Below, piece after piece: positions 1-20,666 of a stretch of 24,926 nt of DNA. Position 1 is the stretch's first letter. Each line of letters begins with the position of its first letter. Source of the DNA: Octopus sinensis (Eukaryota); NCBI RefSeq assembly GCF_006345805.1, contig NW_021836224.1:1-24926 (forward strand), written 5' to 3'. Made by a program: the position numbers and the translations under genes. The notes beneath the pieces are model-generated. The model was given only the letters and a program-made list of their open reading frames with translations. It was not told the origin of the DNA and did not search any database.

Positions 1-89
1 CTCTATGTATATATATATGTGAGTGTGTGAGTGTGCGCACTCGCGTGTGTGAGTAATCGTCCCTACAGGTTCTACGACTCGAGGTAGTA

Positions 90-141
<52 letters not shown>

Positions 142-229
142 CGATGATGATGATGATGATGATAATGATGACAATGATGATGATGATGACGACAATGATG
201 ATGATGTTTATGATGATGATGATGATGAT
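90..229 (+). repeat. (ATG)n microsatellite
   Basis: Near-perfect ATG run with a few ACG/ACA/GTG variants; explains the poly-M and poly-H ORFs. Confidence 0.95.
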
Positions 230-1180: not shown

Positions 1181-1503
1181 AACCTGATATAATATTTGGG
1201 ATAGAGAAGAAAAACTGTCCATAGTTGTAAAAATTAGTTGCCCTTAACATAAGGCTGAAGATCAGTGAAAAAGGGAACATCTATGCTGAACTATTGAGAA
1301 ATCTGCAGTTACTCTATCCAGATTACAAGTTCATGTTTTTACCTGTAATTATTGGGGCACTGGGATATGTAGCCCACTGCCTAAATACCAATCTTGAGAA
1401 ATTAGGCTTTTCAAAACTAGAAAGGAGAAAGCCGATTCGAAGACTACAGATCCAGTCCATCACTGGAACTGTAAAAATCTGTAAACAGAAGTTTATCATT
1501 TAA
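1180..1503 (+). pseudogene. decayed RLE endonuclease domain fragment
   Basis: Includes ORF 1294..1503; upstream part frameshifted; the expected acidic residue in VV(E/D)ISCP reads K. Confidence 0.75.
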
Positions 1504-2552: not shown

Positions 2553-2618
2553 CAGCATCGGTTGTCAAGCGTTGTTGGGGTTCAAACACAGAAACATATA
2601 CACACATACACACATACA

Positions 2619-2663
<45 letters not shown>

Positions 2664-2946
2664 GTATATACATATATATATGACGGGCTTCTTTCAGTTT
2701 CCGTCTACCAAATCCACTCACAAGGCTTTGGTCGGCCCAAGGCTTTGGTCGGCCCAAGGCTTTGGTCGGCCCAAGGCTTTGGTCGGCCCAAGGCTTTGGT
2801 CGGCCCAAGGCTTTGGTCGGCCCAAGGCTTTGGTCGGCCCAAGGCTATAGTAGAAGACACTTGCCCAAGGTGCCACGCAGTTGGACTGAACCTGGAACCA
2901 TGTGGTTCGTTAGCAAGCTACTTACCACACAGCCACTCCTACGCCT
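2553..2946 (-). mobile_element. tRNA-derived CORE-like SINE (family A, octopus OR-like), 3' truncated
   Basis: Minus strand: A-box-like TGGCTGTGTGG (2935-2925), B-box-like GGTTCAGTCC (2892-2883), CORE-like GGCACCTTGGGCAAGTGTCTT (2874-2854), internal (TA)n(TG)n. Homologous to copies at 4787 and 5953. Confidence 0.85.
2721..2846 (+). repeat. perfect 17-bp minisatellite CAAGGCTTTGGTCGGCC x7.4 inside the SINE
   Basis: Units start at 2721, 2738, 2755, 2772, 2789, 2806, 2823; partial unit at 2840. Confidence 0.95.
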
Positions 2947-4004: not shown

Positions 4005-4076
<72 letters not shown>

Positions 4077-4153
4077 ACAAAGGGTCAAATTAATTAATTA
4101 AGAAGTAATTAGTAATTTCACAAGTAGATTGCGTGGATTGTTTTCAAGTACTT

Positions 4154-4255
4154 TGGTTTTTCTGGGAGCCTCTTTTAAAGTAGAAGGAAAGGCTAAGATT
4201 TTTTTGACTGCTATTTCTAAACTTCGGTATGTGACGAAGCAAATCTTGCTGAACC

Positions 4256-4256
<1 letters not shown>
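4154..4256 (+). repeat. diverged dispersed relative of part of the hammerhead array unit
   Basis: AGTAGAAG...TTTGACTGCTATTTCTAAA(C)TTCGGTATGTG...TTGCTGAACCC aligns by eye to the unit segment at about 9955-10060. Confidence 0.75.
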
Positions 4257-4299
<43 letters not shown>

Positions 4300-4327
4300 T
4301 ATATATACATGTGTATTCGTGTATTTT

Positions 4328-4410
4328 TTCCAGTCATTTGATTGCGGCCATGATGGAGCACTGACTTTAGTCGAAGAAATCGACCCCAGGACTTTTTCTT
4401 TAAAAGCCTT
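4328..4410 (-). mobile_element. SINE family A 3' fragment
   Basis: CAGTCATTTGATTGCGGCCATG.TGGAGCAC...AATCGACCCCAGGACTT matches 5953-6030. Confidence 0.75.
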
Positions 4411-5165: not shown

Positions 5166-5952
5166 TAAGCAAATAAACTTCTTAAAAAAAAGTATTACTT
5201 TCGTTAACTATAAAAGGAGATACAAATTTTAACAAACCAGTTGACAGGCGATACACATGGTATGTCAGAGACAAAGGCAAGGGTTTTTTTTAAGAAAAGT
5301 AACGGAACAGTGTGTTAGAAATCTTATGAACGAGCTGTAAAAGCCTGGGGAAAACTACTGGTGTTTCCTTGAACCCGCATTTAGATAATGACAAATGGAC
5401 AAGTTTGGGGTTCCTGTTTACGTATTGCGGGTAGGTGGAGAGAAGGATGTAGAATCCAATAGACTAAGAAAGGGGTTAGAATAGGGTGTGGGTGGGTATG
5501 AGGTATGTATACTGCGAATCAAAGACAGCTGTTTAGTGGAGAGACAGAAAGACAAGCAGCAGACAGGAAAATAGAGTGGGGAGGAAGGAGAGCGGTATGG
5601 GGGAAAGAACTGAACACAGCATAGTTCAGGTCAGGTCAAGATTCATCAATCCAACAAAAGATATGTCAGAACACGACATGTTTATGTTGGAGAGACGGCA
5701 TGTAGTCATGATCCATCCGTTTATCTATCCGCACACGAACACACACACACACATACACACACAAACACACAAACACACACACATCATCATCATCTATCTC
5801 TTTCTACCTTTCTCTCTCTTTCGCTGTCTCTCTCTCTCTCTCTCTCTCTGTATATATATATGTAAATTATAATTTAAAAAAAAGAAATCGAGTTAGAGAA
5901 GGTACAGTAGTATATTTTAGAGAGAATACTCTTTTTAATTTTTTTTCCTTAT

Positions 5953-6312
5953 TTTAGTCATTTGATTGTGGCCATGCTGGAGCACCGCCATTTTAGTCGA
6001 GCAAATCGACCCCAGGACTTATTATTTGTAAGCCTAGTACTTATTCGATCGGTCTCTCTTGCCCAACCGCTAAGTTACGGGGACGTAACACCTAGCATCG
6101 GTTGTCAAGCGGTGTTGGGGGAACAAACACAGACACACAAACATACACAGACACACACACACACACACACACATACACACATATATACATATACATATAT
6201 ACGACGGGCTTCTTTCAATTTCCGTCTACTAAATCCACTCTCAAGGCTTTGGTCGGCTGGAGGTTATAGTAGAATACACTTGCCCAAGGTGACACGCAGT
6301 GGGATTGAACCC
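5953..6312 (-). mobile_element. SINE family A, 5' truncated within the tRNA-like head
   Basis: Contains the 3' body, internal CA/TA microsatellite, ACGGGCTTCTTTCA.TTTCCGTCTAC, CORE-like segment and B-box-like GGTTCAATCCC. Confidence 0.85.
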
Positions 6313-9423: not shown

Positions 9424-9776
9424 TACATATTATATATAATAATATATATATATATATATGTAAGCACTTATGTATAATGGATGGATGGATGGAGGAATAT
9501 AGGGTGGTATACACACGCGCGCACCCACAATCTCAATTAAAACAATTTAAGCTTTTGAGATTGTTTCCCTCTAAGAGAGATATTTGAAAAATGAAAGAAT
9601 TATTTATACATACAATATGTGTATAATATATATATTATATTATATATATATTATATATATATATATATTTGAATTCGGTGATACTAGTTGAGGATTCTAG
9701 CTCGCTCTGATACTGAGTTGAGTTGGTACCTCCTAGTATCTCAAAATTCAATATATAATCATTATGATTATAGTAT

Positions 9777-9883
9777 TCCACGCTGAAGAGAAAAGAAGTT
9801 TCGGTAAGATAGAATTATTTAATATTTAATATTTTAATTCTTATGCTTTCCTAAAACTTGATTTCGAAACGTACGTCCGTGGA
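9777..9883 (+). ncRNA. type I hammerhead ribozyme, unit 1 (intact core; predicted cleavage after C9877)
   Basis: Helix I TCCACG 9777-9782 / CGTGGA 9878-9883; CTGAAGA 9783-9789; helix II closed by G9790-C9865 (GAAA/TTTC); GAAAC 9866-9870; GTAC; GTC 9875-9877. Confidence 0.85.
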
Positions 9884-10373
9884 TAACTTTTAAAAATGTG
9901 TTTGATAGATTGCGGTTAATTCATTCTCTCTTACTGTTTGTGTCAGCCTTCCCATTGCTGTTTTTACTGAGATCTCCCTTTCTAGTAGAAGAAATAGCTA
10001 TAACCCTTTGACTGCTATTTCTAAATTCGGTATGTGGTAAGGCAACTCGTTGCTGAACCTTATTGCTTAGTATTACTTAAATTTTCCTCAAATGAGGCTT
10101 TTACATGCCGAAGACTACTTGGTGTAATTGATAATTATTCCAATTTAATTAATTTCACCCTTCATTATTACGGATAACCATATTTATCTCAGTAGATGAC
10201 TACAGCATCTTGTTTTGGCTACACGCGGGTGGGAAGGGGCTGTTGACACAATCGTTTTCATTCACAAATTTTGAATTCGGTGATACTAGTTGAGGATTCT
10301 AGCTCGCTCTGATACTGAGTTGAGTTGGTACCTCAGTATCTCAAAATTCAATATATCATTATGATTATAGTAT

Positions 10374-10478
10374 TCCACGCTGAAAGAAAAGAAGTTTCGG
10401 TAAGATAGAATTATTTATATTTAATATTTTAATTCTTATGCTTTCCTAAAACTTGATTTCGAAACGTACGTCCGTGGA
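10374..10478 (+). ncRNA. type I hammerhead ribozyme, unit 2 (core G8 missing as assembled; site after C10472)
   Basis: Reads CTGAAAGAAAAG versus consensus CTGAAGAGAAAAG; the rest of the fold is intact. Confidence 0.65.
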
Positions 10479-10965
10479 TAACTTTTAAAAATGTTTGATA
10501 GATTGCGGTTAATTCATTCTCTCTACCTGTTTTGTGTCAGCCTTCCAATTGCTGTTTTTACTGAGATCTCCCTTTCTAGTAGAAGAAATAGCTATAACCC
10601 TTGACTGCTATTTCTAAATTCGGTATGTGGTAGGCAACTCGTTGCTGAACCCTTATTGCTTAGTATTACTTAATTTCCTCAAATGAGGCTTTTACAGCCG
10701 AAGACTACTGGTGTAATTGATAATTATTCCAAATTAATTAATTTCACCCTTCATTATTACGGATAACCATATTTTATCTCAGTATATGACTACAGCATCT
10801 TGTTTTGGCTACACGCGGGTGGGAAGGGGCTGTTGACACAACGTTTCATTCACAAATTTGAATTCGGTGATACTAGTTGAGGATCTAGCTCGCTCTGATA
10901 CTGAGTTGAGTTGGTACCTCCTAGTATCTCAAAATTCAATATAAATCATGTTATGATTATAGTAT

Positions 10966-11069
10966 TCCACGCTGAAGAAAAAGAAGTTCGGTAAGATAGA
11001 TTATTTAATATTTAATATTTTTAATCTTATGCTTTCCTAAAACTTGATTTCGAAACGTACGTCCGTGGA
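10966..11069 (+). ncRNA. type I hammerhead ribozyme, unit 3 (helix II closing G missing as assembled; site after C11063)
   Basis: CTGAAGA 10972-10978 intact, next G absent; GAAACGTACGTC 11052-11063. Confidence 0.7.
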
Positions 11070-11551
11070 TAACTTTTAAAAATGTTGATAGATTGCGGTT
11101 AATTCATTCTCTCTACTTACTGTTTGTGTCACCTTCCAATTGCTGTTTTTACTGAGATCTCCCTTCTAGTAGAAGAAATAGCTATAACCCTTTGACTGCT
11201 ATTCTAATTCGGTATGTGGTAAGGCAACTCGTTGCTGAACCCTTATTGCTTAGTATTACTTAAATTTCCTCAAATGAGGCTTTACATGCCGAAGACTACT
11301 GGTGTAATGATAATTATTCCAAATTAATTAATTTCACCCTTCATTATTACGGATAACCATATTTTATCTCAGTAGATGACTACAGCATCTTGTTTGGCTC
11401 ACGCGGTGGGAAGGGGCTGTTGACACAATCGTTTCATTCACAAATTTGAATTCGGTGATACTAGTTGAGGATTCTAGCTCGCTCTGATACTGAGTTGAGT
11501 TTGGTACCTCCTAGTATCTCAAATTCATATATAATCAGTATTATTATATAT

Positions 11552-11656
11552 TCCACGCTGAAGAGAAGAAGTTTCGGTAAGATAGAATTATTTAATATTT
11601 AATATTTTAATTCTTATGCTTTCCTAAAACTTGATTTCGAAACGTACGTCCGTGGA
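11552..11656 (+). ncRNA. type I hammerhead ribozyme, unit 4 (intact core; site after C11650)
   Basis: CTGAAGA 11558-11564, G11565, GAAACGTACGTC 11639-11650, CGTGGA. Confidence 0.8.
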
Positions 11657-12140
11657 TAATTTTAAAAATGTTTGATAGATTGCGTTAATTCATTCCTCTT
11701 ACCTGTTTTGTCAGCCTTCCAATTGCTGTTTTTACTGAGATCTCCCTTTCTAGTAGAAGAAATAGCTATAACCCTTTGACTGCTATTTCTAAATTCGGTA
11801 TGTGGTAAGGCAACTCGTTGCTGAACCCTTATTGCTTAGTTTACTAAATTTTTCCTCAAATGGGCTTTACATGCCGAAGACTACTTGGTGTAATTGATAA
11901 TTTATTCCAATTAATAATTTCACCCTTCATTATTACGCGATAACCATATTTATCTCAGTAGATGACTACAGCATCTTGTTTGGCTACACGCGGGTGGGAA
12001 GGGGCTGTTGACACAATCGTTTCATTCACAAATTTGAATTCGGTGATACTAGTTGAGGATTCTAGCTCGCTCTGATACTGAGTTGATTGGTACCTCCTAG
12101 TATCTCAAAATTCAATATATAATCATTTATGATTATAGTA

Positions 12141-12248
12141 TCCACGCTGAAGAGAAAAGAAGTTTCGGTAAGATAGAATGATTTTAATATTTAATATTTT
12201 AATTCTTATGCTTTCCTAAAACTTGATTTCGAAACGTACGTCCGTGGA
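12141..12248 (+). ncRNA. type I hammerhead ribozyme, unit 5 (intact core; site after C12242)
   Basis: CTGAAGA 12147-12153, G12154, GAAACGTACGTC 12231-12242, CGTGGA. Confidence 0.85.
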
Positions 12249-12435
12249 TAACTTTTAAAAATGTTTGATAGATGCGCGTTAATTCATTCTCTCTTACCTG
12301 TTTGTGTCAGCCTTCCAATTGCTGTTTTTACTGATCTCCCTTTCTAGTAGAAGAAATAGCTATAACCCTTTGACTGCTATTTCTAAATTCGGTATGTGGT
12401 AAGGCAACTCGTTGCTGAACCTTATTGCTTAGTAT

Positions 12436-12885
12436 AATATATATATATATATATAATTATATATATATATATACATATACATATACATATATATATACAT
12501 ATATATATATATATGTATATTTATATATATATACATATGTACATACAAAGACACATATATATATATATGAATACATGCATATATGCACACAAACACACAC
12601 ACACACACACTTATATATATACATGCACACATGCCAACATACGTGCATACAAACGCGCATACACGTACGTACACAGACATGCATTGAAATACATACATAC
12701 AACCACATATACATACTGACATATACATACATGCATATATACATACAGAAACACGATACATTCACACATACATGCACAGATTCATACATACATGCATACA
12801 TGCATACAACATGCATACATACATTCATAGAAACATATTTATATGCATACATACATATATAAACGTACATGTGTACATACATCGC
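12436..12885 (+). repeat. TA/CA-rich degenerate microsatellite tract
   Basis: Directly visible. Confidence 0.9.
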
Positions 12886-14695: not shown

Positions 14696-15254
14696 TTGGG
14701 TTGTCCGGAAAGTTTATACCGATTTATAGTAGCTCCATTTATTTTAGAACATGGTTGAGTCCATAAAATAGGATTTGACTACACTTCCATTTAGAACACA
14801 GTTTAAGCTATCTTTTCGTGGAAAAAGATTTATGTTCCTACAAACTGTGTTAATTCTGTAACCCTTTAAAATGGAAGATAAGAAAGTTCATTTTCGGCAC
14901 TTGATGCTTTAGGAACCAGACGAAAAGTGCTGCAGCTTGGCTGGGATGTGTTATCCCACTTTCCATATTCATTAGATATTGCTCCTTCGGATTTCTACTT
15001 ATTCAGGTCTCTGCAGAATAGTCTTAATGGTAAAAATTTCAATTCCTTGGATGACGTAAAAAGATACCTTGATGAATTATTTGCTATGAAACAGTCTCAA
15101 TTCTGTGAAGAGGGTATTTTCAAGTTAAAGGAAAGATGGAGACGTATTGTGCAACAAAATGTTTAATATTTGGTTGATTAAAAATGTAATGGCAAGTATT
15201 TATTGACCATTTTCTTTCCTTTAAAAATCGGCACGAACTTCCCGGACAACCCAA
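14696..15254 (+). mobile_element. internally deleted mariner (D,D34D-type) DNA transposon with intact ends
   Basis: 30-bp TIRs, 26/30 identical (14696-14725, 15225-15254), TA on both sides; N-terminal MEDKKVHFRHLML from ATG 14871 joined near 14910-14915 to the C-terminal transposase. Confidence 0.92.
14927..15166 (+). pseudogene. mariner transposase C-terminal fragment
   Basis: LGWDVLSHFPYSLDIAPSDFYLFRSLQNSLNGKNF matches the mariner HPPYSPDLAPSDYHLF motif that holds the third catalytic Asp. Confidence 0.9.
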
Positions 15255-15960: not shown

Positions 15961-15989
15961 CAATCGAGCTTTAAAGACTTCTGATATAT

Positions 15990-16143
15990 TCTTTTATTTC
16001 TTTTATTTGTTTCAGTCATTTGATTGCGGCCATACTGGAGCACCACCTCAAGTCGAACAAATGAACCCCAGGTCTTATTCTTTGTAAGCCTAGTACTTAT
16101 TTCATCGTTCTCTTTTGCGATGATGGGAGAACAAACACACACA

Positions 16144-16217: not shown

Positions 16218-16699
16218 AATAAAATAATATAGCGTAGCGAATTTTTAGAAATTTCACTACCAGTGGCCTAGCATGTATAAAAAGTCATTAGACAACATAT
16301 TTTCCATATAGCCTTACATGCTAGAAGGAGCAGTCAAGGCGTCTAAAACCACATTTAAGAGCAATTTTGAAGGGAATGCTCATAACAGCAAAGATTTCCC
16401 TCATTGTCATAAAGTAAAAATCTTCTTAAAATCTTTTATTTGTTCATCAAAAATCCTGTTTTTATCAATTGAATAATTTTTCCTCCTTTTCTTCCTCTCT
16501 GGACTGTTTCCTGTTTCCAACGCAGAGCCATGCCCGAATCTTCAATCCCACTTCTATCTTTCCATCTAAAAACTTCCACTGAGCATCATTGTAATATATT
16601 CCTCGTGTACGTTCCTCGTGTTTATATATGAAACCAAAAGGAAGATTTACACATCCTTGAAATTTATTTAATTCAAATCATTGTTTTGCATATGTTTGC

Positions 16700-16792
16700 G
16701 ATAATAGAAGACGCACGCCCAAGGTGCCACGCAATGGGACCGATCCTGGAGCCATGCGATTGGGAAGTAAACTTCTTACCACTCAGCTACGC
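16700..16792 (-). mobile_element. SINE family A head/CORE fragment
   Basis: TAGAAGAC.C..GCCCAAGGTGCCACGCA...CTTCTTACCAC.CAGC matches 2851-2933. Confidence 0.7.
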
Positions 16793-18239: not shown

Positions 18240-18813
18240 CAGGGTGTTTCAAATGTCTGATATCATTTGAGATGTAAATCTCACAGAAGCTACATAGTCG
18301 AAGCAAATGAAACTAAACAGACTTCATGTTGAGTAACATAACATTTATTCCTCCAAATGTGAATGAGAAATTCAAAGGTATGTGAATTCCATGAACGATT
18401 TCGCATTGTCTGCGCTTTCAGCTGTCGTCTGCTGTTATGACCTGAACGGGCTGCAGCTTGTAGGTTTTCATTAGCAAGCGTTTGCTCAGGGCACGCCAAA
18501 TTGTCTTTGGAGGAATCTGAGTTTCAAGACCTGTTCTTCTTATGGACTTCTTGGGGCTTCGCAAGAGTTTTTGATGAACCCACCCGACCGTCTCTTCTAA
18601 TGCTAGTGGTCGTCCAGATCCTCTTTCCTTGCACAAACAGCCTTCCTTTTGGATATTTTGTGCCATGTCCAAATCTGCATTGCCGTTGGTGAATTTTTAG
18701 AGAAATCTCTCACAAATGCACGCTGCACATATAAACATATTTAGAAACATATAAAATATTAAACTTTAAAATTTTACCTGTTTCTACACATGCTGTGAAA
18801 ATTTGAAGCCATT
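18240..18813 (-). mobile_element. internally deleted Tc1/mariner-superfamily element, transposase N-terminal HTH (DUF4817-like) remnant
   Basis: TA-CAGGGTGTTTCAAATG end at 18238-18255; partial partner CATTTGAACA near 18804-18813. Minus-strand translation across a frameshift: VQRAFVRDFSKNSPTAMQIWTWHKI/QKEGCLCKERGSGRP...RSPKKSIRRTGLETQIPPKTIWRALSKRLLMKTYKLQ. Confidence 0.8.
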
Positions 18814-19356: not shown

Positions 19357-19544
19357 ATAGATAAATTTCCTCTATTTACACAATATTGCGGTCTCTTTCT
19401 TTCTTTTGTTATCTTACCGCTTTACCAATATAATATATATATATATATATTATATATATATAATATAATATATATATATATATGTAATGTGGTATTATAT
19501 ATATATGTATGTATTATAATAAATGTTTTTGTATATATATATAG

Positions 19545-20410
19545 TGTGTGTGTGTATATATATACTTATATATATATGTGGTGTGCGTGCACGGAAGTTT
19601 ATTTTTCATTCTCTCTCTGTATATTTTCTCTTGTTTGTTTCTGTTGAACAGCGTCGGCTCGAAACATGGCAGACTTTTTCTTATTCCTGAGCGTCAAACT
19701 AATACACTTGCTTGTTGTTCATATACCTTTCTTCGTTTTTTTGCTTTTCTATAAATTTCAATTATATTATATGAAGAGAGAAAGAGAGAGAGAGAGAGAG
19801 AAATACATAAGTAGAGAAAGAGAGAGAGAAAATGAATGTGCGTATATGCATATACCATATTATACCAGTGTAGATATACATGGGTCTGCTATCGTTAGTC
19901 TTAAACAAAAATAAAAAACTAAACACAATGCAGGAACGTTATGAAGGGAACGGGTATATATATATATATATATATATATAATGCAGGAACGTTATGAAGG
20001 GAACGGGTATATATATATATATATAATATATATATAATATATATACCCGTTCCCTCATAACGTTCCTGCATTGTGTTTAGTGTTTTTATTTTTGTTTAAG
20101 ACTAACGATAGCAGACCCATGTATATCTCTCACTCTTTCTCTACTTATGTATTTCTCTCTCTCTCTCTTTCTCTCTTCATATAATATAATTGAAATTTAT
20201 AGAAAAGCAAAAAAACGAAGAAAGGTATATGAACAACAAGCAAGTGTATTAGTTTGACGCTCGGGAATAAGAAAAAGTCTGCCACGTTTCGAGCCGACGC
20301 TGTTCAACAGAAACAAACAAGAGAAAATATACAGAGAGAGAATGAAAAATAAACTTCCGTGCACGCACACACATATATATATATATGTATATATATACAC
20401 ACACACACAT
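19545..20410. repeat. long inverted duplication (palindrome) centred on (TA)n
   Basis: 19580-19954 is the reverse complement of about 20046-20375, except for a ~45-bp segment missing from the right arm and a few substitutions; a 27-bp direct copy of 19928-19954 lies at 19981-20007 in the spacer. Confidence 0.92.
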
Positions 20411-20666
20411 ATATATATATACAAACATTTATATATATACATACATATATATATAAATACACACATATATGTATATATAACAACATATATATGTACATAT
20501 GTATATTATTTATTTATGTATACGAGTGTGAGTGTGTCTGTGTTTATTACTGTGTTTGTGTTTGTACGTCTGTGTGTATGTGTGTGTCGGATACTGTCCC
20601 AGGATGGCCACACTCCGTGGTTGAACCAATATATATATATATATATAGAAAGAGAGAGAGAGAGAT

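What the first reader, a model, noticed from the sequence alone, without database searches (positions are those of the whole stretch)
9668..12435. Tandem array of ~590-nt units, each with a type I hammerhead ribozyme: candidate cephalopod retrozyme / circular RNA system
Seen: 4.7 head-to-tail units, each with [TCCACG]-CTGAAGA-[helix II]-GAAAC-GTAC-GTC-[CGTGGA] on the + strand. Predicted cleavage after 9877, 10472, 11063, 11650 and 12242 gives monomers of 595, 591, 587 and 592 nt, with no long ORF. Established: tandem type I hammerheads define metazoan non-LTR retrozymes and Penelope-like-element pseudo-LTRs. Read-through transcripts self-cleave to unit-length RNAs with 5'-OH and 2',3'-cyclic-phosphate ends, which RtcB-type ligases can circularise; the animal retrozyme monomers I recall are shorter (~170-400 nt). 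Inference: this is a large, non-coding, self-processing retroelement family, probably mobilised in trans by a Penelope or LINE reverse transcriptase, that may make ~590-nt circRNAs in this animal.
Basis: partly seen in the sequence, partly recalled or inferred. Interest (0 to 1): 0.92.

Follow-up and report, generated by a model that had tools for sequence, protein, structure and literature searches.

The report
Tandem hammerhead-ribozyme retroelement (retrozyme) array
A 2.8-kb block of about 4.7 head-to-tail copies of a ~599-base non-coding unit, each carrying a type I hammerhead self-cleaving RNA motif, fits the known animal "retrozyme" class of Penelope-related parasitic repeats, so it is a new example of a known kind and not a new system.

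Summary
The array is real. It spans 9667-12435 and holds 4.67 units spaced 595/591/587/592 nt; the majority consensus is 599 nt. Every unit has the 3' half of a type I hammerhead (GAAACGTACGTC) and both helix I strands. As assembled, only 3 of 5 copies have an intact core and helix II base; copy 2 lost a core base and copy 3 lost G10.1. Intact copies align end to end with Rfam Hammerhead_1 at 21.6-21.8 bits. That is below the 34-bit threshold, most likely because helix II carries a 70-72-nt insert. A lenient descriptor finds 0.01 such motifs per shuffled window. The architecture is the published canonical metazoan one: 6-bp helix I, a 4-bp helix II base, and a 2-bp helix III with a palindromic tetraloop that can form a dimer. 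The monomer is non-coding, has 35% GC and is strongly self-paired (z -5.95). The array sits inside a (TA)n microsatellite, and no reverse-transcriptase ORF lies in the window. A degraded relative at 4072-4256 also lies between (AT)n tracts. Best reading: a non-LTR retrozyme, that is, a non-autonomous Penelope-type element. Its size is inside the published 51-972 bp range. Cleavage, circles, copy number and the cephalopod host are untested.

The parts
9667..12435 (+). Tandem array of 4.67 units. The majority consensus is 599 nt and the assembled units are 595, 591, 587 and 592 nt. It starts at consensus position 389 and ends at 196.
9777..9883 (+). Hammerhead copy 1, intact. TCCACG-CUGAAGA-helix II (76 nt)-GAAA-C-GUAC-G-UC|CGUGGA, with cleavage predicted after 9877.
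   Evidence: RF00163 21.6 bits, model 1-45
10374..10478 (+). Hammerhead copy 2, defective as assembled. The core reads CUGAA-AGA, one base short. The site after 10472 is probably not cut.
10966..11069 (+). Hammerhead copy 3, defective as assembled. G10.1 at the base of helix II is missing. The distal stem lost one A and the opposing T, so it stays paired.
11552..11656 (+). Hammerhead copy 4, intact core. Two A residues are missing from the 5' strand of helix II. Cleavage is predicted after 11650.
   Evidence: (RF00163 21.8 bits)
12141..12248 (+). Hammerhead copy 5, intact. Cleavage is predicted after 12242.
9622..9668 (.). (TA)n tract abutting the 5' end of the array. The junction has AT(TT) microhomology.
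12433..12568 (.). (TA)n tract abutting the 3' end of the array (TAGTAT|AATATATA).
4072..4256 (+). Degraded relative of the unit, without the ribozyme. Positions 4155-4256 match consensus 81-182 (+) and 4072-4127 match consensus 235-291 inverted. It lies between (AC)n(AT)n and (AT)n tracts. Its 3' end is at consensus 182, against 196 for the array.

Best explanation
This is a genomic insertion of a non-LTR retrozyme: a non-coding, non-autonomous retroelement of the Penelope-like-element sphere made of head-to-tail ~599-nt units, each with a canonical metazoan type I hammerhead.

Inferred mechanism: read-through transcription of the + strand gives a multimer. Helix III is only A-U and C-G closed by GUAC, so a single motif is weak. 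ACGUACGU is a perfect 8-nt palindrome, so two hammerheads, either neighbours in the transcript or in trans, form a double hammerhead and cut after the GUC. [quoted passage not shown] A reverse transcriptase supplied in trans, most likely from a Penelope-like element, copies it more than once round and inserts the tandem cDNA at a nick in a (TA)n microsatellite.

Shown here: the array, the motif, its architecture, the predicted folding, the lack of coding capacity and the (TA)n flanks. Inferred from the family: transcription, cleavage, circularisation and the identity of the mobilising enzyme.
For: The array and its period are confirmed. Intact copies align to all 45 positions of Rfam Hammerhead_1 with every core base matching. 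The lenient descriptor expects 0.01 motifs per shuffled window.

Helix I has 6 bp. Helix II has a 4-bp base starting with G10.1-C11.1. Helix III has 2 bp plus a 4-nt palindromic loop. This is the canonical metazoan architecture as described in PMC4209133 and is 'similar to invertebrate HHRs' in PMC7229834.

The predicted dimer contains the 8-bp intermolecular helix III, at -52.2 kcal/mol against 2 x -19.9. The same helix forms between neighbouring hammerheads in a 750-nt transcript. The monomer folds at -164.5 kcal/mol, z -5.95, with 0 of 100 shuffles as stable. GC is 34.7%. No ORF in the unit exceeds 76 codons and the longest has no homologue. No long ORF and no Pfam RT/GIY-YIG hit lie in the 9.6 kb upstream or 12.5 kb downstream.

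Both this array and the relic at 4072-4256 lie inside (TA)n tracts, which cover about 8-9% of the window. (TA)n is a published preferred target of Penelope-like elements (PMC8557442). A preprint finds animal retrozymes to be sister to Penelope pLTRs, with consensus lengths of 51-972 bp.
Against: The Rfam score of 21.6-21.8 bits is below the 34-bit gathering threshold, and no match is reported at gathering. Two of five copies are broken as assembled.

The five copies differ almost only by single-base indels, so there is no real covariation support for any helix. The hammerhead region alone is no more stable than shuffles (z -1.3).

No related sequence was found in any searchable collection, so copy number, expression and linkage to Penelope elements elsewhere in the genome are unknown. 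Some LINE clades also target microsatellites (my own knowledge), so the (TA)n flanks do not single out a Penelope enzyme.
Confidence: 0.72

Rival explanations
1. It is a decayed remnant. The family once carried a working hammerhead, but this array, and perhaps the whole family, is now an inert tandem repeat that is neither cut nor circularised.
For: Two of five cores are damaged as assembled. The only other copy in the window is a ribozyme-less relic. There is no expression evidence of any kind.
Against: Units are 96-100% identical to their consensus. The differences are mostly homopolymer indels: 48 indel events, 31 in homopolymer context and 37 of them deletions, against few isolated substitutions. 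That pattern looks more like long-read assembly noise than age. Three copies keep a perfect core and all helices.
Confidence: 0.15
2. It is the pseudo-LTR array of an autonomous Penelope-like element whose ORF lies next to it.
For: Penelope pLTRs carry type I hammerheads, occur as head-to-tail partial tandems and insert into (TA)n.
Against: No stop-free stretch longer than about 145 codons of non-repetitive sequence occurs anywhere in the window, and no RT or GIY-YIG domain was found. Pfam missed even the mariner fragment, so short relics could escape. The motif has the canonical architecture. It is not the minimal Penelope variant, which has 0-1 bp in helix III, 4-5 bp in helix I, 7-8 bp in helix II and a bulge before 10.1.
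Confidence: 0.06
3. It is an ordinary tandem repeat in which a hammerhead-like string arose by chance.
For: The Rfam score is sub-threshold. There is no covariation. The five copies amount to one independent observation.
Against: All 11 fixed core bases are present: CUGA, GA and GAAA plus U16.1, with C17 at the H position. The motif also has a 6-bp helix I, a G10.1-C11.1 pair and a palindromic helix III, in the one arrangement (one per unit of a low-GC, self-paired, non-coding tandem) that defines a known class. The lenient descriptor expects 0.01 per window.
Confidence: 0.04

Closest known systems
Metazoan non-LTR retrozymes (Cervera & de la Pena 2020, PMC7229834; for example the Mytilus galloprovincialis 350-390-bp repeats, Acropora 220-240-bp repeats and axolotl Rtz_331/353)
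   Same: Head-to-tail repeats with one type I hammerhead per unit. Low GC. No LTR and no coding capacity. A highly self-paired monomer. A short helix III with a palindromic loop that favours dimeric cleavage. No linked RT.
   Different: The unit is ~599 nt, against the ~170-400 nt reported there. Helix II is not a 4-bp stem with a hairpin loop: it has a 4-bp base, a 2x2 internal loop and a ~60-nt AU-rich arm, 76 nt in all between A9 and G12. Expression and circles were shown for those families and are untested here.
Vertebrate non-LTR retrozyme families of Li, Clavereau & Pollet 2026 (bioRxiv 10.64898/2026.07.22.740005)
   Same: Consensus lengths of 51-972 bp include 599. Most families have at most seven repeat units, and this array has 4.7. 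They are interpreted as non-autonomous derivatives of Penelope pLTRs.
   Different: The host is different and unverified, probably an invertebrate. Homology to a Penelope pLTR could not be tested here.
Penelope-like element pLTR hammerheads (Cervera & de la Pena 2014, PMC4209133)
   Same: Type I topology, a palindromic helix III, dimer-dependent activity and tandem context. The (TA)n insertion preference comes from PMC8557442.
   Different: Those are mostly minimal variants with little or no helix III, a shorter helix I and a bulged base before 10.1, and they flank an RT/GIY-YIG ORF. Here the motif is canonical and no ORF is present.
Newt satellite 2 / Schistosoma Sm-alpha hammerhead repeats (my own knowledge, also cited in PMC7229834)
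   Same: Transcribed tandem or SINE-like repeats with type I hammerheads and a weak helix III that act as double hammerheads.
   Different: Those units are ~330 nt with a short helix II, and there is no sequence similarity to this unit.

Membership tests
Hammerhead ribozyme, type I (Rfam RF00163) | Conserved core C3-U4-G5-A6-N7-G8-A9 ... G12-A13-A14 ... A15.1-U16.1, H17 | tested here: met
   All core positions are present in copies 1, 4 and 5. Copy 2 lacks one base of CUGANGA.
Hammerhead ribozyme, type I (Rfam RF00163) | Three helices with helix I open-ended, plus a G10.1-C11.1 pair | tested here: met
   Helix I has 6 Watson-Crick bp. The helix II base is GAAA/UUUC. Helix III is AC/GU plus GUAC. 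G10.1 is missing in copy 3.
Hammerhead ribozyme, type I (Rfam RF00163) | Score at or above Rfam's gathering threshold (34 bits) | tested here: not met
   21.6 and 21.8 bits with full-length model alignment. A 70-72-nt insert sits where the model expects about 10.
Hammerhead ribozyme, type I (Rfam RF00163) | Helices supported by compensatory changes | tested here: inconclusive
   The five copies are near-identical. The only case is a paired loss of an A and its partner U in the distal helix II of copy 3.
Hammerhead ribozyme, type I (Rfam RF00163) | Site-specific self-cleavage 3' of H17 | not testable with these tools
   Needs in vitro transcription.
Metazoan non-LTR retrozyme | Head-to-tail tandem repeat with one type I hammerhead per unit | tested here: met
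   4.67 units and five motifs at a 587-595-nt spacing
Metazoan non-LTR retrozyme | Low GC (<45-50%), non-coding, no LTRs | tested here: met
   GC is 34.7%. The longest stop-free stretch is 76 codons and has no homologue. There are no terminal repeats other than the units themselves. PBS and PPT were not searched for.
Metazoan non-LTR retrozyme | Monomer RNA highly self-paired | tested here: met
   MFE is -164.5 kcal/mol with z -5.95. The circular fold is -157.6 kcal/mol with z -5.3 and 62% of bases paired.
Metazoan non-LTR retrozyme | Unit size within the reported range | tested here: met
   599 nt is outside the 150-450 bp of PMC7229834 but inside the 51-972 bp of the 2026 preprint.
Metazoan non-LTR retrozyme | Dispersed multi-copy family in the genome | tested here: inconclusive
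   One degraded relative lies 5.4 kb away. The genome was not available, and the public collections searched gave no hits.
Metazoan non-LTR retrozyme | Expressed as unit-length linear and circular RNA | not testable with these tools
   No transcriptome access.
Penelope-like element pLTR | Flanks an RT plus GIY-YIG ORF | tested here: not met
   No such ORF or domain lies within 9.6 kb upstream or 12.5 kb downstream. Sensitivity for short relics is low.
Penelope-like element pLTR | Minimal hammerhead variant (helix III absent or 1 bp, helix I 4-5 bp, bulge before 10.1) | tested here: not met
   Canonical 6/4/2-bp architecture with no bulge between A9 and G10.1
Penelope-like element pLTR | Insertion bias for (TA)n microsatellites | tested here: met
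   Both the array and the relic are bounded by (TA)n on both sides. (TA)n covers about 8-9% of the window.

The most novel reading that the evidence does not exclude
The family may be a retrozyme with two unusual properties. First, its hammerhead may tolerate or use a ~60-nt AU-rich arm grafted onto helix II past an internal loop that stands in for loop 2. Second, its genomic insertions may share a fixed 3' end about 182-196 nt downstream of the cleavage site; the array ends at consensus 196 and the relic at 182. If that boundary recurs genome-wide, reverse transcription starts at a defined site on the circle or on a permuted linear RNA, primed from a (TA)n nick. That would give a direct sequence read-out of how a Penelope-type enzyme primes on a retrozyme RNA.
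Probability: 0.15. Interest if true: 0.55.

Novelty: new member of a known kind. Interest (0 to 1): 0.35.

Why it matters
If the host is a cephalopod, this would extend hammerhead retrozymes to a clade where I found no report. Two full-text searches returned only a Penelope survey that mentions cephalopods in another context. It would also add a family near 600 nt with an extended helix II.

Practically, it is a clean candidate for an abundant ~600-nt ribozyme-made circular RNA in that animal. Its (TA)n-embedded junctions could inform how these elements are primed. None of this changes the current picture of retrozymes.

Tried and rejected
- Rfam at gathering thresholds found nothing. Only the E-value mode recovers Hammerhead_1.
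- TRF cannot see the array because its longest period is 500.
- I looked for a second ribozyme on the minus strand. GAAAC...GTC strings recur there with the unit period, but no CUGANGA partner exists, the descriptor gives no hit and Rfam gives no hit. Rejected.
- Pattern scans for the hammerhead with a variable helix II, and for a GC-rich unit segment, found no matches in metagenome or viral contigs.
- A protein search with the longest unit ORF found nothing.
- Attempts to name the host failed. The mariner fragment gave only ~66%-identical PF01359 fragments from unrelated sources. A SINE-derived peptide gave nothing. Literal sequence strings were found in no paper. My recollection that the window's SINE-like repeat resembles an octopus SINE is memory only.
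- A Pfam scan of 102 non-repetitive stop-free segments gave no family. The control showed that Pfam also misses the mariner and LINE-like fragments when scanned alone, so this negative excludes intact or moderately decayed RT ORFs only.
- ARAGORN found no tRNA-like head in the unit or the window.
- I tested whether the relic's 5' end coincides with the cleavage site (CGTGGAT at 4133). The alignment is no better than shuffles. Rejected as unsupported.
Full report
**Observation**

The region 9667-12435 is a head-to-tail array. Direct-repeat families recur with start-to-start spacings of 595, 591, 587 and 592 nt. The string GAAACGTACGTC occurs exactly five times, ending at 9877, 10472, 11063, 11650 and 12242. 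A majority consensus of the units is 599 nt. It aligns to the four full units at 96.4-96.8% identity, to the 5' partial unit (9667-9877, consensus 389-599) at 100%, and to the 3' partial unit (12243-12435, consensus 1-196) at 96.4%. That makes 4.67 units. TRF missed the array only because its longest period is 500.

**How the units differ**

I counted 48 indel events: 37 deletions and 11 insertions, with 31 in a homopolymer context. Most of the 63 mismatched columns are runs of adjacent columns beside an indel, so they are alignment shifts. Only a handful are isolated substitutions. This pattern suggests noise in a long-read assembly of a tandem repeat and not evolutionary divergence. Short tandem repeats elsewhere in the window are clean, however; for example, the 17-nt unit at 2721-2846 is repeated 7.4 times at 100% identity. 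I therefore cannot settle the question and describe the copies "as assembled".

**The ribozyme motif**

On the + strand each unit carries, in order:
- TCCACG
- CUGAAGA
- a 76-nt helix II region
- GAAA
- C-GUAC-G
- UC|CGUGGA

In the intact copies every fixed core base of the hammerhead is present. Helix I has six Watson-Crick pairs. Helix II begins with G10.1-C11.1. Helix III is A15.1-U16.1 and C15.2-G16.2, closed by GUAC.

Rfam at gathering thresholds reports nothing. In E-value mode, copies 4 and 1 align to all 45 positions of Hammerhead_1 (RF00163). Copy 4 scores 21.8 bits (E 0.054 over 2.9 kb) and copy 1 scores 21.6 bits (E 0.0028 over 131 nt). Both have a 70-72-nt insert where the model expects about 10. 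The threshold is 34 bits, so formal Rfam membership is not met, and the long insert is the likely reason.

A lenient descriptor of my own required helix I of at least 5 bp, helix II of at least 3 bp and helix III of at least 2 bp. It found copies 1, 4 and 5, nothing on the minus strand, and 3 hits in 300 dinucleotide shuffles of the window.

Copies 2 and 3 fail. Copy 2 reads CUGAA-AGA, so a core base is lost. Copy 3 lacks G10.1. Rfam finds no hammerhead in either at E<=10. As assembled, this locus would be cut after 9877, 11650 and 12242, giving one 1773-nt piece and one 592-nt monomer.

**Architecture compared with the literature**

Cervera and de la Pena describe the canonical metazoan type I hammerhead as having a helix I of 6 bp, a helix II of 4 bp, and a helix III of 1-2 bp capped by a 2-4-nt palindromic loop. 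It is poorly active alone and active as a dimer in tandem repeats (PMC4209133). The present motif matches on all three helices.

One difference is that after its 4-bp base, helix II opens into a 2x2 internal loop. It then continues as a ~60-nt AU-rich arm that the MFE and centroid folds both predict. Helix I likewise continues after a 2x2 internal loop. The two internal loops sit where loops 1 and 2 make their tertiary contact in canonical motifs. That is my inference and not a test.

ACGUACGU is a perfect palindrome. Co-folding two motifs gives -52.2 kcal/mol against 2 x -19.9, with the 8-bp intermolecular helix III of a double hammerhead. The same helix forms between adjacent motifs in a 750-nt two-ribozyme transcript.

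There is no covariation evidence because the copies are near-identical. The one exception is copy 3, which lost an A in one strand and the opposing T in the other strand of the distal helix II stem and so stays fully paired. I estimate about a 0.15 chance of such a coincidence, so it is only an anecdote.

**The unit as a whole**

- GC content is 34.7%.
- The longest stop-free stretches are 76 codons (minus strand) and 50 codons (plus strand).
- The 76-residue translation has no relative among 5.8 billion proteins and no Pfam match.
- The linear monomer, from cleavage site to cleavage site, folds at -164.5 kcal/mol. Dinucleotide shuffles average -124.4 +/- 6.7, giving z -5.95 with 0 of 100 shuffles as stable.
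- The circular fold gives z -5.3 with 62% of bases paired.
- No tRNA-like segment is present.

**Surroundings**

The array is bounded on both sides by (TA)n tracts, at 9622-9668 and 12433-12568. Both junctions show short microhomology, so no target-site duplication can be read.

No intact or moderately decayed reverse-transcriptase or GIY-YIG ORF lies in the 9.6 kb upstream or 12.5 kb downstream. The Pfam scan is insensitive to short relics.

A second, degraded member of the family lies at 4072-4256. Positions 4155-4256 match consensus 81-182 (nhmmer E 3e-9; local score 78 against a maximum of 25 for shuffles). Positions 4072-4127 match consensus 235-291 in inverted orientation. It has no ribozyme. 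It too lies between (AT)n tracts, and its 3' end (consensus 182) is within 14 nt of the array's 3' end (consensus 196).

(TA)n arrays cover about 8-9% of the window (summed). Perfect (TA) runs of at least six units cover 4.4%. Two of two insertions landing inside (TA)n is therefore unlikely by chance, at about 0.01. (TA)n is a published preferred target of Penelope-like elements (PMC8557442). From my own knowledge, some LINE clades also target microsatellites.

**Interpretation**

All the testable defining features of animal non-LTR retrozymes are met (PMC7229834): a tandem arrangement, one type I hammerhead per unit, low GC, no LTRs or coding capacity, and a highly self-paired monomer.

The unit is longer than the ~170-400 nt of that paper. 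It is inside the 51-972 bp range reported for 57-plus families in a 2026 preprint. That preprint also reports that most families have at most seven units per array and are sister to Penelope pLTRs.

I therefore read the array as a new member of this known class. Its life cycle is inferred from the family:
1. The array is transcribed as a multimer.
2. Double-hammerhead cleavage cuts after the GUC.
3. The ~599-nt RNA is ligated into a circle.
4. A Penelope-type enzyme supplied in trans copies it more than once round and inserts the cDNA at a (TA)n nick.

None of these steps is shown here.

**Rivals**

- An inert, decayed remnant (0.15).
- A pLTR of an autonomous element (0.06). This is disfavoured by the missing ORF and by the canonical, non-minimal motif.
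- A chance motif (0.04).

**What could not be done**

No related DNA or protein was found in any searchable collection. Family size, expression and homology to Penelope pLTRs therefore remain open.

The host could not be identified. The window is AT-rich, rich in microsatellites, and carries a mariner relic and SINE-like repeats. That fits an invertebrate animal, but "cephalopod" rests only on memory.

Two full-text searches found no report of hammerhead retrozymes in cephalopods. A confirmed cephalopod origin would thus be a modest taxonomic extension.

**Verdict**

Interest is 0.35, and the novelty rating is a new member of a known kind.

Noticed in passing
window 4072-4256: A degraded, ribozyme-less relative of the unit lies between (AC)n(AT)n and (AT)n tracts. 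It matches consensus 81-182 directly and 235-291 inverted. Its 3' end is within 14 nt of the array's 3' end in unit coordinates, which hints at a preferred 3' boundary or priming site.
   Followed up: partly
window 10966-11069: Hammerhead copy 3 lost an A in one strand (GAATTA to GATTA) and the opposing T in the other strand (TAATTC to TAATC) of the distal helix II stem. The stem stays fully paired but is one pair shorter. This is the only hint of structure-preserving change.
   Followed up: partly
window 9667-12435: Differences between units are dominated by single-base, deletion-biased, homopolymer indels (48 events) with few isolated substitutions. This looks like long-read assembly noise confined to the tandem repeat. 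The first 210-nt partial unit is identical to the consensus.
   Followed up: partly
window 19428-20517: A palindrome of about 1.1 kb. The arms 19428-19829 and 20126-20517 are 92% complementary, and the centre 19872-20128 is self-complementary. It is rich in (TA)n and (GA)n. It could be a foldback element or an assembly artefact.
   Followed up: no
window 14882-15163 (+) and 18421-18696 (-): At 14882-15163 is a relic of a mariner-type transposase C-terminus, 66% identical to PF01359-bearing fragments. At 18421-18696 is a stop-free stretch that resembles a Tc1/mariner N-terminal HTH region by eye only; it had no Pfam hit.
   Followed up: partly
window 2610-2933, 6127-6311, 16698-16787; also 4316-4409, 5926-6062, 15986-16118: Two dispersed short repeat families (SINE-like, 79-89% identity), usually next to microsatellites. 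At 2721-2846 a 17-nt piece of the first family (CAAGGCTTTGGTCGGCC) is amplified 7.4 times at 100% identity.
   Followed up: no
window 1231-1500 (+): A 90-codon stop-free stretch (…FLPVIIGALGYV…LEKLGF…). From memory it resembles the C-terminal tail of invertebrate LINE ORF2 proteins. It had no Pfam hit.
   Followed up: no
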